Below, one piece after another: positions 37,627-44,253 of a stretch of 64,000 nucleotides of DNA. The position numbers and the translations under genes are program-made. The notes below the pieces were generated by a model, which was not told the origin of the DNA, did not search any database, and saw nothing but the letters and a program-made list of their open reading frames with translations. The DNA lies in the IMG/VR virus record IMGVR_UViG_3300024259_000010, positions 124,001 to 188,000 of that record; one strand, written 5' to 3'. The first letter of the stretch is position 1, and each line of letters begins with the position of its first letter.

Positions 37627-38085
37627 ATGAAAAATGGTAAAGTATTTATTATCCCTAATGGTATTTCAGAAGAAGGCGCAGACTATAACCTTAAGCAGAC
37701 CAATGACATCATGACAGCATTTGGTCTAGATGAACAAACGGTAACACCATCCGGTCACAAAGGATGGCCTCATCATTATTCTGATCCACTCGTACAAGTG
37801 TGGTGGACTGATGGACTCGAACATAAAGAGGAAGAGAATTACAGTGAAAACTGGACTGATCATGGTGTAGCTTTAGATGGTGAAGAAATGCGTGGGACAC
37901 GACGTGTCCCTTATGCTATCCCTCTTTCACTTATTGTTGATAAGAAAGAAGGTGACATTCTTAAAGTGACCATTCATGGTCATGATGTAGAAGTGGTCTG
38001 TCAGCAAGCAGGTTTCCGTCATGCGAGTCATGGAACATTTGAAGAAGTTCTTCAGGGACTCCTAGACCGTCGTGAAGCGGCATAA
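37627..38085 (+). CDS. Hypothetical early protein
   Basis: 152 aa; AGGAG RBS; TATATTAC at 37563; terminator at 38097-38132. Confidence 0.7.
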   Translation: MKNGKVFIIPNGISEEGADYNLKQTNDIMTAFGLDEQTVTPSGHKGWPHHYSDPLVQVWWTDGLEHKEEENYSENWTDHGVALDGEEMRGTRRVPYAIPLSLIVDKKEGDILKVTIHGHDVEVVCQQAGFRHASHGTFEEVLQGLLDRREAA

Positions 38086-38178
38086 GAACAAATAAGAATA
38101 AGAGTAGCTAACAACTACTCTTATTTTTTTTTATTATTTTGATGGGATATATTATACTCAGATTAGAGGAGATCAAAT

Positions 38179-39619
38179 ATGGATAAGAAACCTGTTTACC
38201 AGTTCTTACATTCCACATACTGGAAGAAGAAAGGTAATGATGAAGATGCAGTCGTTGCCTGTCTCAAAGATGTAGATACTGGGAAAACTAAATTAGAAGT
38301 TATCACCAACCCAAAACGTAGTATTGGTATAACCAGAAAAGGGTTACAGGAATCTACTAATACTAAAAAGATTTGTGAAGATAATAACAATCTAGATATT
38401 TACACAATTGATAATAAAGATTTACGGGATGAGCTACAAGAAAAGTTACTTGGTTACAGTGGTGGTTATACATCACTCAAGAAACTTATTAACTCCCCAT
38501 ATGTATATGGAGCTGATATTGACATTTCTGTACTTATTAAACAACACTTTCTAAAGCAGTCAGATCGTACTGCTAAAAGCTTCAGGGTAGGTGGTCTGGA
38601 CATCGAAACCTCTGTTTTAGGGGGTAGAGAAATCCTAATGATTACATACGTTTCACCGGAGCTAAAAGTCTTTACTGCAGTTCTAGACTCATTCGTTGAA
38701 AACGTTTCTATCGATTCTATTAAAGAAAAGTTTAAAAAAGAATTAGCTGAGTTCAAAGGAAAGCTAAATAAAGAAACTTTAAAGATATTTGATGAGTATG
38801 CATCTGATATCATGCCCAATATTAATATCACTTACCATAAGACTGAAGTAGATGTCATCACTTGGATCTTTAAAATGATTCATGCGGATAAACCTGACTT
38901 CATTTCAATTTGGAACATGGGTTACGATATCCCATATATGCTAGATCGTCTGAGAGTACATAATGTATTCCCACATAAGATCATGTGTCATCCAGAAGTA
39001 CCATGGCAATATCGTATATGTTCATATAAAGCAGATCGTAATCCTAACGTAAGTCACTTCTCATATAAATGGGATGTGTTTGAATTATCTGGTTACAGTC
39101 AGTTCTATGACTCAATGTGTCTATTCAGTCGAATCCGTAAACATGAAGGTGTTGAGGATAGTTATAAACTCGAAGCTATTGCTAAGAAGATAACTGGTGC
39201 TGGAAAGATGGACAATGATAATGCTAATCACTATACCATGCAAACAGAGAAACCCGGTGAGTATGTTGTCTACAATATTTTTGATAGTTTGTTACTACCT
39301 CTAATTGAAAAGAGATGTAAAGATATTGAATCTATGATGATGTTACTTGAGGATACTAGTATTGATAGTTTCGCTCAACAGACAACTCAATTGAAAAACT
39401 GGTTCTATCGGTATTGTAAAGATAAAGGTAAAATGCCTGCTTCTTGGTATGGTAAGATTGAACATGAAACAGATGGTATGTTACATAACACAGGTGGTAA
39501 TGTATTAGCTCCAGGGCTAGCATGGCGAACTGGTGTGAATAAGATTAAAGAATTATTATCTTGTTCTAAAAACATTTTATCTAAACTTATTATTCTAGCA
39601 TGTGATATTGACGTTGCCT
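38179..39619 (+). CDS. Family B DNA polymerase, exonuclease-containing subunit (phiKZ gp82-like), exon 1
   Basis: ExoI LDIETS, ExoII WNMGYDIPY, YKLEAIA, ExoIII YNIFD; ends at CDIDVA, the first half of polymerase motif A. Confidence 0.85.
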
Positions 39620-40618
39620 TTTGTTTGAAAAAAAACATTGGGGCCTTGTAGTAGTAATACTATAATGAAAATTTCCTTAATTGACTGGAACCCACATAAT
39701 CAAATAAACTACAACATAACCAGTAATGGTAAGTGTGAATGTTTTAAAATTATTTGTTGTGGCAATCAGCAGCGAAGCTGTTACTGTAGTTACAGTAACC
39801 TTACTATGTAAATAGATAAGCCTATGTGATACATAGGGTGAACGTTCAGAGACTATCCCGACAGGGAGTACACCTTTCATAGGGTGGAAATAGGAAACAT
39901 CCTACGGGATGATAATATAGTCCAAATTCTCAAATAATCATACAGATGTATTTCAGTGTAGTTTAAGTATATATTACTTAAATAGTAAGGAGATATAAAT
40001 ATGTATGAGATAGATACTTATAGTTATGAAGAAAAAGTATCATTATACGAACATGGTTTCCCGGATTACATCCTGACAATAGATGGTAGAGTATGGACGA
40101 ATAAACAACGTCGATGGTTGACTATTGATAAAGGAGGGTGTGTACTTTTAGCTTATGGTCCACAACAATACAGTAGAGTAAGTGTACGAGTATTGGTAGG
40201 TAATATATTTATTAACCCACCAGTGTTCAACAACCATTGTCAACCACTTTGGTTCAATGTTGATTATTACATTTATTCTGATGGTAAAGTGTGGAGTTGT
40301 TTCTCTGCTAAATGGTTGTTGCCAAACTTAGTAAAGCAATATCATTATATTAATATAAGTGGTAGTGCGTATTTACTAAATAGATTGGTAGCACAGACAT
40401 ACGTACCCAATCCAGATAATAAACCAGAAGTGAATCATAAGAATGGAATTAAAATAGATAATCGTGCAGAGAACCTTGAATGGTGTACGAGATCTGAGAA
40501 TATGATTCATGCGTATAATAATGGATATCTTGATGATAGTCTTGCGAAAGCACAGGCTGCCAGATAAGATATTTAAAATTAAGATAGATTGTTCTATCTT
40601 TTTTTGTTTGAGAATTAG
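39620..40618 (+). mobile_element. Group I self-splicing intron carrying an HNH homing endonuclease
   Basis: Exon 1 ends in U39619 and the intron ends in G40618. Core elements: AATTGACTGGAA (P), AATCAGCAG (Q), GTTCAGAGACTA (R), AATATAGTCC (S). The guide CATTG-GGGC pairs with 5' exon GCCU and 3' exon CAATG. Splicing restores DIDVA-S-MYPS in frame. Confidence 0.92.
40001..40567 (+). CDS. Intron-encoded HNH homing endonuclease
   Basis: [40 protein letters not shown]; two NUMOD4-like (Y.I..DG.VW) repeats. Confidence 0.9.
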
Positions 40619-40833
40619 CAATGTACCCCTCCATTATGGCGGCGTGTAATTTCTGTAAGGATAGTAAAATCTTAACAGTGCTTAATATTCAGAATATGCG
40701 TTCCATTGATATTGTAGATTTCTTAGGTCATGCTTCTGCGCCCGAAGAGAACTCAGTTTATCTATGTCATAAGTATTTAAAGTTACCAGACTATAAAGAA
40801 ATGTTAGAAGCGTTCGAGAAGGAGAAGACATAA
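40619..40833 (+). CDS. Family B DNA polymerase subunit, exon 2
   Basis: (S)MYPSIMAACN..KD completes motif A; the spliced CDS is 1656 nt (551 aa). Confidence 0.85.
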
Positions 40834-41006
40834 TGTCTGAAGATGAGAAAGTTATTGTTGATCAAGCAAGAGAGATTATTCGATTAAAAGGAGTTGTAAA
40901 AGAGAATAATAATGCATTCTCTTCTATTAAAGGTATTTTAGATAATATACCTGGTAAGACTTCTGAGATGAATCGTATTTATAATCAGATTCCAAAGATT
41001 GATTAA
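40833..41006 (+). CDS. 57-aa hypothetical protein
   Basis: TAATG coupling to the polymerase stop; AGGAG RBS; MSEDEKVIVDQAREIIRLKG... Confidence 0.55.
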   Translation: MSEDEKVIVDQAREIIRLKGVVKENNNAFSSIKGILDNIPGKTSEMNRIYNQIPKID

Positions 41007-41343
41007 TATGAAAATTAAATCAGTTTGGTTCTGGAGACACTGGATTCCATTCAGAGAGAAGCTTGGTATACTAATGCCAACTTTCTTTCCGAATAAACCA
41101 GCTTGGTCGATCGAGTTTAAAGAAGATACTAGTAATCAAATATATGAGTACTTCTCTAGATGGTGTAAAGATATTGAGGAACATACTAGACTTAATGATG
41201 ATGACGATGAACATCCTACTATTATTAGTATAGATCCTGGTAAGTTAATGTTAACCGGTGTTGATATGTCACCTACACCAGCTATGAAGAAATTCATTTT
41301 TACATTTAACAATATGAATACTAATGAAAACTCTACAACTTAA
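40999..41343 (+). CDS. Hypothetical protein
   Basis: ORF within a coupled operon (ATG likely at 41008). Confidence 0.5.
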   Translation: MINMKIKSVWFWRHWIPFREKLGILMPTFFPNKPAWSIEFKEDTSNQIYEYFSRWCKDIEEHTRLNDDDDEHPTIISIDPGKLMLTGVDMSPTPAMKKFIFTFNNMNTNENSTT

Positions 41344-42819: not shown

Positions 42820-44253
42820 ATGAGTATGAAATTACTCCCGCTTATGGACTATGAAGCTCTATATCAAAAATCACCCAATGCTAAAATCATTCCTGCTGAT
42901 GTATCATCGTTTACTTCTAAGAAACAAGTAACTGAATTTACTAAGCATATCTTCATGGATGGTGATATTGGTGTTGGGTTAGACGCTACATGTGAGTGTG
43001 GTAATCTGACAGGGTTATACTTGTTAGGAAAAGAATGTAATTTTTGTAAGACTGAGGTAAAGCGTCCTACAGCTACAGATGTTGCTTTTAATAGTTGGAT
43101 TGAAATTCCAATGTTCTTACCACCATTACTACAACCAGCCGCTCACCGTATCTTAAAGAAATGGATGGGAACTGGATGTAACAGAGAACAGTTGTTAACA
43201 TCACTGTTAACAGTTGGGTCACAATTACCAGAACCTATTGCTGAGTTCTATACACCTGGTGTATGGTCTTTCTATAATAACTTTGATAAATTAATCGAGT
43301 TCTTATTGACAGAGTATCGCCCACTACGTGAACCACAAAAAGGTGTTAAGACTGTAAATGAGAAATCTATACATATCCGTAAGTTTATCAAGATGTATAG
43401 AAAGAGATTATTTACACGTCACTTCCCTGTCATGGATAAAAGTATGCATGTTGTTAATGCACAAGGTACAATGAGTTTCGTTGATACTTCTGTACAGTGT
43501 ATTATGAAAACAGTTATTGAACTTGCAACTATTCATTATAATTATGTTGAATCTAAAAATATGCCGGAGATCGAAAGATGTGCGGTTGATATGATATCAG
43601 CTTATTATGAATATAGTGAGATCATTCTTACAACTAAAGTACAGAAGAAGTTCGGATTAATCCGCAGACATATTCTAGGAGCAAAATGTCATCTCACTTT
43701 CCGAGGTGTTATTGTTCCTATTGTAGATGCTGCAGACGGGGATGAACTTTATCTACCATGGGGTATTGGTGTACAGCAACATAAATTAGAGATTATCAAT
43801 ATCTTAGTTAATAGAAAAGGTCACACCCCACATCAGGCTCAGTTAATATTTGAGAAAGCCAAATATAAGTATGATCCTGAAGTAGATGCAATCATCGACA
43901 TATTAATTAAGGAATGTCCTTACAAAGGATTCCCATGTATCTTAGGACGTAATCCAACACTTAACCATGGAGCCATGCAAATGTTCTTCGTAACAAGGGT
44001 TAAGAAGGATGCGGATGATGATACAATATCAATGAGTCCACTGTGTCTGAGAGCACCTAATGCTGACTTTGATGGTGATGCTTTATATGGAAGTATGATT
44101 AAAGAAATGGGTGAAGTTCCATTCTTTATGAACATGCATCCTATGACCACTATGTTAACAGAAGAAGAATTATCAATATCTTCCAATGTACATATTGGTG
44201 AGCAATGCTGTGTACAATTAACCAGTTGGTTAAATCAACCAATTGTAGGATAA
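42820..44253 (+). CDS. Multisubunit RNA polymerase beta' N-terminal subunit, probably non-virion RNAP (phiKZ gp55-like)
   Basis: N-terminal zinc site CECG...CNFC; KFGLIRRHILG, FRGVI, RNPTL; catalytic NADFDGD; early-type promoter motif upstream. Confidence 0.88.
   Translation: MSMKLLPLMDYEALYQKSPNAKIIPADVSSFTSKKQVTEFTKHIFMDGDIGVGLDATCECGNLTGLYLLGKECNFCKTEVKRPTATDVAFNSWIEIPMFLPPLLQPAAHRILKKWMGTGCNREQLLTSLLTVGSQLPEPIAEFYTPGVWSFYNNFDKLIEFLLTEYRPLREPQKGVKTVNEKSIHIRKFIKMYRKRLFTRHFPVMDKSMHVVNAQGTMSFVDTSVQCIMKTVIELATIHYNYVESKNMPEIERCAVDMISAYYEYSEIILTTKVQKKFGLIRRHILGAKCHLTFRGVIVPIVDAADGDELYLPWGIGVQQHKLEIINILVNRKGHTPHQAQLIFEKAKYKYDPEVDAIIDILIKECPYKGFPCILGRNPTLNHGAMQMFFVTRVKKDADDDTISMSPLCLRAPNADFDGDALYGSMIKEMGEVPFFMNMHPMTTMLTEEELSISSNVHIGEQCCVQLTSWLNQPIVG

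What the first reader, a model, noticed from the sequence alone, without database searches (positions are those of the whole stretch)
39613..40625. Group I intron splits DNA polymerase motif A, with splice sites predictable to the base
Seen: the pol ORF drifts into nonsense after DIDVA and resumes ~1 kb later at MYPS. Joining T39619 to C40619 gives GCC TCA ATG (DIDVASMYPS). P1 (GCCU/GGGC with a U-G pair), P10 (CAUUG/CAAUG), P/Q/R/S and the terminal G are all present. The HNH ORF lies 3' of the catalytic core, in the P9 region. Automated annotation would report two broken genes.
Basis: seen in the sequence. Interest (0 to 1): 0.6.

Follow-up and report, generated by a model that had tools for sequence, protein, structure and literature searches.

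The report
Self-splicing intron in phage DNA polymerase

Summary
Confirmed. The window is part of a 235,833-bp uncultivated phiKZ-like jumbo phage. Its DNA polymerase N-subunit gene runs 38179-39619, is interrupted by 999 nt (39620-40618), and resumes at 40619-40833. Rfam's group I model matches 39617-39945 (48.7 bits, just under the cut-off of 50; E 2e-12 for the genome). The guide sequence 39636-39644 pairs with the last four exon-1 bases (P1, U-G at the splice site) and the first five exon-2 bases (P10). G40618 is the terminal G. Joining gives codon T|CA, a Ser, completing D-x-x-S-M-Y-P-S with the spacing seen in uninterrupted orthologs.

Decisive evidence: four related phage contigs carry ORF-less homologous introns at the same position. 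Their P1 guide changes in step with the exon codon (five different pairs), and 33 of 57 predicted core pairs show compensatory changes.

A 13-bp long-range helix loops out a 188-aa ORF whose confident half matches only I-HmuI, the SPO1 polymerase-intron endonuclease.

Splicing and cleavage are inferred; no reads could be obtained. The kind is well known: SPO1, Bastille, and E. coli phage Goslar, whose intron sits 13 nt upstream in the same motif. I file it as a new member of a known kind, with modest interest.

The parts
38179..39619 (+). Exon 1 of the DNA polymerase N-subunit gene (exonuclease domain up to DIDVA plus the first base of the Ser codon)
   Evidence: phrog_3011 DNA polymerase positions 16-497 of 576, E 1.9e-80; Pfam DNA_pol_B_exo1; aligned to uninterrupted orthologs
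39616..39644 (+). P1 stem-loop: GCCU 39616-39619 pairs with GGGC 39641-39644 (U39619-G39641 wobble at the 5' splice site). Inner stem 39622-39626 / 39633-39637. Internal guide sequence 39636-39644
   Evidence: P1 covaries with the exon codon in five homologous introns
39620..40618 (+). Group I intron, 999 nt, subgroup IA-like (has P7.1 and P7.2)
   Evidence: RF00028 48.7 bits, E 2.2e-12 for the genome; homologous same-site introns score 57.2, 50.7 and 33.7 bits; 33 of 57 consensus pairs have compensatory changes
39647..39664 (+). P2 hairpin, 7 bp with a GUAA loop
   Evidence: pair probabilities 0.95-0.99; covaries in relatives, all with GNRA loops
39672..39677 (+). P3 5' strand UUUCCU, pairs with 39892-39897 AGGAAA
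   Evidence: columns 63-68 / 329-334; four different covarying versions among the five introns
39682..39771 (+). P4 (39682-39688 / 39766-39771, A39684 bulged) and P5 (39692-39696 / 39758-39762), with a P5a hairpin at 39719-39730. Contains the classical P and Q elements
39772..39845 (+). P6 (39772-39774 / 39843-39845) with two inserted hairpins, 39780-39799 and 39821-39837
39851..39922 (+). P7 (GACUA 39851-39855 / UAGUC 39918-39922) enclosing P7.1 39856-39867, P7.2 39871-39886, the P3 3' strand 39892-39897 and P8 39898-39911. Contains the R and S elements
   Evidence: P7 covaries (GAUCA/UGAUC in L006, GGUCA/UGACC in L301)
39925..39937 (+). 5' strand of a 13-bp long-range helix (P9 / P9.0), partner 40604-40616
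   Evidence: In the MFE of the full precursor, with pair probabilities about 1; a helix this long between two so-placed 20-mers occurs in about 2 of 10,000 random trials
40001..40567 (+). Intron ORF, 188 aa, HNH endonuclease; Shine-Dalgarno AAGGAG at 39987-39992
   Evidence: Pfam HNH_3 37.3 bits (cut-off 24.8), phrog_59 and phrog_959; only PDB match by sequence and by fold is I-HmuI 1U3E
40581..40600 (+). 8-bp hairpin followed by a U run; resembles the P9 hairpin of the ORF-less relative L005
   Evidence: pair probabilities 0.85-1.0
40604..40618 (+). 3' strand of the long-range helix (40604-40616), then A40617 and the terminal G40618
40619..40833 (+). Exon 2: CA completes the Ser codon, then MYPS... 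70 codons and a stop. The first five bases form P10 with 39636-39640
   Evidence: phrog_3011 positions 500-568 of 576; tblastn to relatives' exon 2; P10 is identical in all five introns

Best explanation
Bases 39620-40618 are a group I (subgroup IA-like) self-splicing intron in the gene for the N-terminal subunit of this jumbo phage's two-part family B DNA polymerase. That subunit carries the exonuclease domain plus motif A.

Proposed mechanism:
1. The pre-mRNA folds so that guide sequence 39636-39644 holds the end of exon 1 (P1, U39619-G39641).
2. An external guanosine bound in P7 attacks after U39619.
3. The guide then aligns exon 2 (P10). G40618 enters the G site, and the exons are ligated.
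4. The ligated mRNA has a TCA Ser codon, giving D-I-D-V-A-S-M-Y-P-S and a protein of about 551 aa.

A 13-bp helix (39925-39937 / 40604-40616) loops out 666 nt and brings the 3' splice site back to the core. That loop encodes an I-HmuI-like HNH endonuclease. By analogy, the enzyme nicks or cuts intronless polymerase alleles of co-infecting relatives near the insertion site, so that repair copies the intron in (homing).

Shown here: sequence, structure, covariation, homology. Inferred: catalysis, timing, endonuclease target and activity.
For: - **Ribozyme match.** RF00028 covers 39617-39945 over the full model length, E 2.2e-12 for the genome.
- **P1 and P10.** Together they form a contiguous 9-nt complement of the ligated junction.
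- **Covariation at the splice site.** Five same-site introns have covarying P1: GCCU/GGGC, AGGU/GCCU, UCCU/GGGA, AAGU/GCUU, ACGU/GCGU. P10 and the Ser junction are invariant.
- **Core covariation.** The RNAalifold consensus recovers P2, P3, P4, P5a, P6, P7.1 and P8, with 33 of 57 pairs compensatory. P7 also covaries.
- **Intronless alleles.** They have the same spacing and align to RB69 motif A.
- **Exon matches.** The two exons cover phrog_3011 positions 16-497 and 500-568.
- **Long-range helix.** Pair probability is about 1 and chance is about 2e-4.
- **Endonuclease.** HNH_3 scores above its cut-off. Catalytic H146, N158 and N167 are invariant in a 28-sequence alignment. The fold matches I-HmuI at Foldseek E 7.8e-6.
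- **Precedent.** The Goslar phage's DNAP-N gene has an HNH-bearing intron in the same motif.
Against:
- The Rfam score is 1.3 bits below the curated cut-off.
- The P4-P6 periphery differs from the four relatives: no P5 extension and an enlarged P6. Activity therefore cannot be read across from them directly.
- The first 87 residues of the endonuclease are modelled poorly (pLDDT below 50), and the protein lacks I-HmuI's C-terminal DNA-binding region. Its target and activity are unknown.
Confidence: 0.93

Rival explanations
1. The intron is a decayed, non-splicing relic. The polymerase N-subunit would then be made as two separate polypeptides (a 490-aa product ending at 39651 and a 70-aa product from ATG 40621), or the gene is dead.
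For: The Rfam score is slightly under the cut-off. Exon 2 happens to begin with ATG. A relative (L016) has this gene divided into two ORFs, with its own ribosome-binding site and no ribozyme match. The polymerase is already a two-gene enzyme in this lineage.
Against: All core helices, the junction sequences, the U-G pair and the terminal G are intact, and they fit the covariation pattern of four relatives. The split would fall inside the catalytic motif rather than beside it as in L016. There is no Shine-Dalgarno sequence in front of 40621; the bases there form the 3' strand of the long-range helix.
Confidence: 0.04
2. It is a group I intron but splices at neighbouring positions, for example after U39620 or at another G near 40612.
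For: Four U residues follow GCC (39619-39622), and U39620 could also pair with G40 of the guide.
Against: Only the pairing 39619/40619 keeps the frame and avoids a stop. Using G40612 gives UAA, and splicing after U39620 would need a non-G last base. All five homologs use the same register, with the wobble G immediately 3' of the P10 strand.
Confidence: 0.02
3. It is not an RNA element at all: an intein, a frameshift or assembly error, or a free-standing HNH gene inserted between two genes.
For: HNH genes are often free-standing in phages. A second HNH_3 gene sits elsewhere in this genome with no ribozyme match.
Against: The pol frame meets a stop 11 codons into the insert, at 39651. The insert has a full ribozyme match and covarying helices. 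ORF-less versions of the same insert interrupt the same codon in four other contigs.
Confidence: 0.01

Closest known systems
Escherichia phage Goslar DNAP-N (gp068) intron with homing endonuclease gp069 (bioRxiv 10.64898/2026.10.01.755736; NC_048170)
   Same: Same gene family (N-subunit of the split family B polymerase of phiKZ-like phages) and same motif. A group I ribozyme is present (RF00028 44.7 bits), with an HNH_3-type endonuclease ORF. The host gene was annotated as truncated.
   Different: The insertion site is VAD|LDISSSYPN, 13 nt upstream of the window's site. The Goslar intron is 1762 nt, and its ORF (with NUMOD1) lies 5' of the core rather than 3' of it. The two look like independent insertions.
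Bacillus phage SPO1 / SP82 DNA polymerase intron with I-HmuI / I-HmuII, and Bastille I-BasI (cited in PMC11620839 and PMC12908238)
   Same: A group I intron in a phage DNA polymerase gene, encoding an HNH endonuclease. I-HmuI is the only solved structure that matches the window's ORF by sequence (E 8e-6) and by fold.
   Different: From my own knowledge, not tested here: the host gene there is a family A polymerase. The window's protein lacks I-HmuI residues 113-174 (the C-terminal DNA-binding part) and instead has 87 unmatched N-terminal residues.
PhiPA3 gp210 intron endonuclease (PMC11620839)
   Same: An HNH endonuclease inside a group I intron that interrupts a conserved essential gene of a phiKZ-like phage. 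It was shown to cut the intronless allele of a co-infecting relative.
   Different: The host gene there is an RNA polymerase subunit. No functional data exist for the window.
ORF-less same-site introns in uncultivated phage contigs L005, L006, L009, L301
   Same: Same insertion position, same P10 and same core. Intron identity to the window is 47-58% over aligned columns.
   Different: They are 313-357 nt with no ORF. They have a large P5 extension and a simple P6, whereas the window has a short P5 region and two extra P6 hairpins.
Phage T4 nrdD (sunY) intron
   Same: A subgroup IA phage intron with its ORF downstream of the catalytic core (recalled from memory, not tested here).
   Different: Different host gene and a different endonuclease family; no sequence comparison was made.

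Membership tests
Group I intron (Rfam RF00028) | Match to the covariance model at or above the curated gathering score (50 bits) | tested here: inconclusive
   48.7 bits, full-length match 1-253, E 2.2e-12 for the genome. Same-site homologs score 57.2 and 50.7 (above the cut-off) and 33.7.
Group I intron | P1 formed by the internal guide sequence and the exon-1 end, with a U-G wobble at the 5' splice site | tested here: met
   GCCU 39616-39619 / GGGC 39641-39644; five covarying versions in homologs.
Group I intron | Terminal G, and P10 between the guide and the start of exon 2 | tested here: met
   G40618; CAUUG 39636-39640 / CAAUG 40619-40623, 5 of 5, identical in five introns.
Group I intron | Conserved core P3-P8, including the P3/P7 pseudoknot and the P4-P6 domain, supported by covariation | tested here: met
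   RNAalifold on five sequences gives 57 pairs, 33 with compensatory changes; P3 has four versions. P7 was checked separately and has three versions.
Group I intron, subgroup IA | Extra hairpins P7.1 / P7.2 between P7 and P3' | tested here: met
   39856-39867 and 39871-39886, present in all five introns. No subgroup-specific models were available.
Group I intron | Guanosine-dependent self-splicing | not testable with these tools
Needs an experiment.
HNH homing endonuclease, I-HmuI-like | HNH catalytic motif | tested here: met
   Pfam HNH_3 37.3 bits against a cut-off of 24.8. H146, N158, N167 and H170 are invariant in 28 relatives.
HNH homing endonuclease, I-HmuI-like | Fold of the N-terminal sheet plus HNH module | tested here: met
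   Model residues 88-188 have pLDDT above 90. The only significant PDB match is 1U3E: E 7.8e-6, 104 columns, 31% identity.
HNH homing endonuclease, I-HmuI-like | C-terminal helical / helix-turn-helix DNA-binding region of I-HmuI | tested here: not met
   The match stops at I-HmuI residue 112 of 174 and the ORF ends 5 residues later. I therefore say it shares the catalytic module, not the full I-HmuI architecture.
HNH homing endonuclease | Site-specific cleavage of the intronless allele, and homing | not testable with these tools
   Inferred from location and family only.
Family B DNA polymerase motif A (DxxSLYPS) | The interrupted stretch is homologous to motif A of a solved family B polymerase | tested here: met
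   The intronless relative L008 (LDVSSMYPS...NISKET) aligns to RB69 polymerase 410-442. That stretch alone scores weakly, but the whole-protein hit has E 3e-4 and the order exonuclease domain then motif A is kept.

The most novel reading that the evidence does not exclude
This intron lineage has lived at one codon of polymerase motif A through deep divergence of a clade of uncultivated phiKZ-like phages. Exon-1 proteins are only 35-39% identical, and intron and exon divergence track each other. The window's copy is the only one of the five clear same-site introns with a detected endonuclease ORF. If so, its HNH enzyme would be a live weapon that cuts the polymerase active-site codons of intronless or ORF-less co-infecting relatives, as shown for PhiPA3 gp210. 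Together with Goslar's independent intron 13 nt away, motif A of this split polymerase would be a recurrent battleground for mobile introns.
Probability: 0.25. Interest if true: 0.5.

Novelty: new member of a known kind. Interest (0 to 1): 0.3.

Why it matters
- **Annotation.** Without the splice, this phage appears to lack an intact polymerase catalytic motif, and gene callers would emit a truncated gene plus a 70-aa orphan. This has already happened for Goslar gp068 and BpSp gp207/gp206.
- **A clean comparative example.** The five same-site introns show a guide sequence tracking synonymous and non-synonymous drift of its host codon.
- **Codon constraint.** The intron fixes the Ser-Met codons as T|CA ATG, whereas intronless alleles use AGT, TCG or AGC for that Ser.
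- **A candidate enzyme.** The endonuclease may be a new site-specific nicking or cutting enzyme aimed at a polymerase active-site sequence.
- **No new principle.** None of this changes how such elements are understood to work.

Tried and rejected
- **Default Rfam scan** (gathering threshold) of the whole window found nothing. The match appears only with E-value thresholds.
- **Megablast** of the locus against GenBank phages found no match.
I did not try to get reads another way.
- **Pattern scan for the P7-P7.1 element** hit more than 115 viral contigs, but they are introns at other sites. It was useful only to show that the core type is widespread.
- **Guide-plus-P4 pattern scan** found L301 in viral contigs. 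In metagenomes it found L326 and L369 (same exon context as L301), L376, and the window's own contig.
- **10-nt direct repeat** at both intron ends (39619-39628 / 40602-40611): I rejected it as a target-site duplication. By my rough estimate (not run as a computation), a few such repeats are expected by chance in 1 kb of 33% G+C sequence. The 3' copy is explained as the strand of the long-range helix.
- **Sigma-70 promoter and terminator scan** of 37900-41100 was at background.
- **The large protein searches** were not used, because the family scans left no protein open.
Full report
**Context.** The window is bases 124001-188000 of a 235,833-bp IMG/VR virus record, estimated 91% complete. Three features mark it as a phiKZ-like jumbo phage:
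- a major head protein of phrog_3231;
- a phiKZ-type RNA polymerase beta-prime fragment, phrog_2987, E 1e-84, at 42820-44253;
- a two-gene family B DNA polymerase.

It is far from anything cultured. The best GenBank phage matches to exon 1 are 25-29% identical at the protein level, and there is no nucleotide match.

**Observation.** The frame from ATG 38179 matches the phage family 'DNA polymerase' phrog_3011 at positions 16-497 of 576 (E 1.9e-80) and Pfam DNA_pol_B_exo1. It reads ..DIDVA at 39604-39618, then runs 11 unrelated codons to a stop at 39651. A 70-codon frame starting MYPS at 40621 matches positions 500-568 of the same family. Between them lies a 188-aa ORF (40001-40567) with an HNH_3 domain. 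Orthologs in Vibrio phage pir03, Serratia phage Totoro and Erwinia phage Phobos are single uninterrupted genes of 575-595 aa. They read DID-I-T-S-G-YPN, DID-V-K-S-S-YPS and DAD-L-T-Q-A-YPS at this point. Exactly one residue is therefore missing between DIDVA and MYPS. T39619 + CA 40619-40620 supplies a Ser, the commonest residue there.

**Ribozyme.** Rfam's group I model matches 39617-39945 end to end at 48.7 bits. That is 1.3 bits under the curated cut-off, so the default scan was blank. The E-value is 4.9e-11 locally and 2.2e-12 for the genome, and this is the genome's only such match. Mapped by hand, and confirmed by folding and comparison:

| Element | Coordinates |
|---|---|
| P1 | 39616-39619 / 39641-39644, U39619-G39641 wobble |
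| Inner P1 stem | 39622-39626 / 39633-39637 |
| P10 | 39636-39640 / 40619-40623 |
| P2 | 39647-39664, GUAA loop |
| P3 | 39672-39677 / 39892-39897 |
| P4 | 39682-39688 / 39766-39771 |
| P5 | 39692-39696 / 39758-39762 |
| P6 | 39772-39774 / 39843-39845, with two extra hairpins |
| P7 | 39851-39855 / 39918-39922 |
| P7.1 and P7.2 | 39856-39867 and 39871-39886 |
| P8 | 39898-39911 |
| Terminal G | 40618 |

The P7.1 / P7.2 pair is the hallmark of subgroup IA, the type usual in phages. The guide sequence 39636-39644 is a contiguous complement of the ligated junction.

**Comparative proof.** The nearest relatives of exon 1 in IMG/VR (34-39% protein identity) fall into two classes.
- **Uninterrupted:** L007 (DVDVVSDYPS), L008 and L010 (DLDVSSMYPS), L011-L015, L017.
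- **Interrupted at the same place:** L005, L006 and L009 break off there and carry RF00028 matches of 57.2, 33.7 and 50.7 bits. A pattern scan added L301.

These four introns are 313-357 nt and have no ORF. All five, including the window, splice after a U that is the first base of a TCA Ser codon. All end in G and share P10 CAUUG/CAAUG. The three exon bases before the U differ, and the guide changes to match:

| Intron | Exon end / guide | Residue before the splice |
|---|---|---|
| window | GCCU / GGGC | Ala |
| L005 | AGGU / GCCU | Arg |
| L006 | UCCU / GGGA | Ser |
| L009 | AAGU / GCUU | Lys |
| L301 | ACGU / GCGU | Thr |

(All.) P7 also covaries: GACUA/UAGUC, GAUCA/UGAUC and GGUCA/UGACC. 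An RNAalifold consensus of the five cores recovers P2, P3, P4, a P5a hairpin, P6, P7.1 and P8. Of its 57 pairs, 33 have compensatory double changes. This fixes the splice sites to the base as well as sequence alone can. Divergence of intron cores (47-58% identity to the window; 71% for the closest pair, L005 and L009) tracks that of the flanking exons (58-67%; 76% for L005 and L009). That fits long co-residence better than recent transfer.

**The 3' domain and the ORF.** Folding the whole precursor (39613-40625) gives a 13-bp helix between 39925-39937, which starts three bases after P7, and 40604-40616, which ends two bases before G40618. Pair probabilities are about 1. Between two random 20-mers of this composition, a helix that long arises in about 2 of 10,000 trials. 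It closes a 666-nt loop that holds two things:
- the ORF, with Shine-Dalgarno AAGGAG at 39987-39992;
- an 8-bp hairpin (40581-40600) that resembles the P9 hairpin of ORF-less L005.

The ORF is looped out, so the 3' splice site sits next to the core. In the MFE, the ORF's ribosome-binding site and AUG are paired with 39938-39954, which could mask translation in the precursor. This is untested.

**The endonuclease.**
- Pfam HNH_3 scores 37.3 bits against a cut-off of 24.8. phrog_59 and phrog_959 match at E 1e-29 to 1e-32.
- The only PDB sequence match is I-HmuI (1U3E), E 8e-6: residues 88-183 align to I-HmuI 12-112.
- An AlphaFold model built on 28 relatives is confident for residues 88-188 (pLDDT above 90) and poor for 1-87.
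- Its only significant Foldseek match is again 1U3E: E 7.8e-6, 31% identity.
- H146, N158, N167 and H170 are invariant.
- It lacks I-HmuI's C-terminal DNA-binding region. By eye, residues 20-45 resemble a second copy of the N-terminal sheet motif; this was not tested.
- Relatives of this ORF sit 3' of group I cores in other viral contigs, such as L026 and L038.

**The host gene.** The intronless relative L008 aligns LDVSSMYPS..NISKET to RB69 polymerase 410-442, which is motif A with the catalytic Asp. The insertion is therefore within the codon equivalent to RB69 Ser414 (numbering from my own knowledge of RB69). The rest of the polymerase (Pfam divDNApol PF20286, E 8e-92, 687 aa, uninterrupted) is a separate gene about 85 kb away, at genome coordinates 77180-79240 on the minus strand. 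This matches the DNAP-N / DNAP-C arrangement described for Chimalliviridae (bioRxiv 10.64898/2026.10.01.755736).

**What is known.** Group I introns with HNH nicking endonucleases in phage polymerase genes are classical: SPO1, SP82, Bastille and Pf-WMP3, all cited in PMC12908238 and PMC11620839. In phiKZ-like phages, the PhiPA3 intron endonuclease gp210 was shown to attack a co-infecting relative (PMC11620839). The closest case is E. coli phage Goslar. [quoted passage not shown] I located its junction at VAD|LDISSSYPN, 13 nt upstream of the window's site, with the ORF 5' of the core. It is the same motif but a different, apparently independent intron. The P3-P5a part of the window's core is 71-79% identical to introns in phiKZ (between gp179 and gp178), phiR1-37, Listeria phage LPJP1, PBS1 and BpSp.

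**Verdict.** Both the observation and the interpretation are correct. This is a new member of a well-known kind. Confidence is 0.93 that it is a functional group I intron with these splice sites. Interest is 0.3.

Noticed in passing
L016:5330-5620 (IMGVR_UViG_3300037553_000311): In this relative, the polymerase N-subunit gene is divided into two ORFs just upstream of an intact motif A (..GICLDI stop; then GGAGA, ATG, ..CDFKSAYPC..). The gap is about 190 nt and has no ribozyme match. It is possibly a further natural split of the enzyme, or the footprint of a lost element.
   Followed up: partly
L019:4965-5289 (also L020, L021) and L218:3501-3792 (Bacillus phage BpSp): The same gene family carries group I introns at two other sites. 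One is after ..VDQMLNYAG in L019-L021 (RF00028 67.1 bits). The other is between BpSp gp207 and gp206, which are annotated as two 'B-family DNA-polymerase' CDSs. With the Goslar site and the window's site, that makes at least four insertion sites in one gene family.
   Followed up: partly
L376:3310-3880 (metagenome contig Ga0256837_1001065): A sixth same-site intron (exon ..GDLDVA, P1 GCGU/GCGC), about 560 nt long. Its exon 2 starts CGAUG, and the base before it is A, with the G one position further up. The usual terminal-G rule and the reading frame disagree by one base. I cannot tell whether this is an assembly error or a real variant.
   Followed up: partly
window 39938-40008: In the minimum-energy fold of the precursor, the HNH ORF's Shine-Dalgarno sequence (39987-39992) and start codon (40001-40003) are paired with 39938-39954. 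This could be translational masking of the endonuclease in unspliced RNA.
   Followed up: no
window 39619-39628 and 40602-40611: An exact 10-nt direct repeat (TTTTGTTTGA) sits at the two ends of the intron. By my rough estimate (no simulation run), a few repeats of this length are expected by chance in 1 kb of this composition. The 3' copy is part of the long-range helix.
   Followed up: yes
genome G000:C1:53562-53699 (outside the window): A second HNH_3 ORF (180-aa frame, 23.9 bits, just under the cut-off) with no group I match anywhere else in the genome. It is probably a free-standing endonuclease gene.
   Followed up: no
window 38094-38128: A 13-14-bp inverted repeat with T runs on both strands, 50 nt upstream of the polymerase start codon. 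It looks like a bidirectional terminator between the preceding gene (37627-38085) and the polymerase gene.
   Followed up: no
L217:3001-3130 (phiKZ AF399011 186515-186644): The phiKZ stretch most similar to the window's intron core lies in the unannotated gap between PHIKZ179 and PHIKZ178. The GenBank record shows no feature there.
   Followed up: no
intron-bearing versus intronless alleles: The five clear same-site intron-bearing alleles (L376 excepted) spell Ser-Met as T|CA ATG, fixed by the splice-site U and P10. Intronless alleles use AGT, TCG or AGC for that Ser. This is a visible codon-usage footprint of the intron on its host gene.
   Followed up: partly
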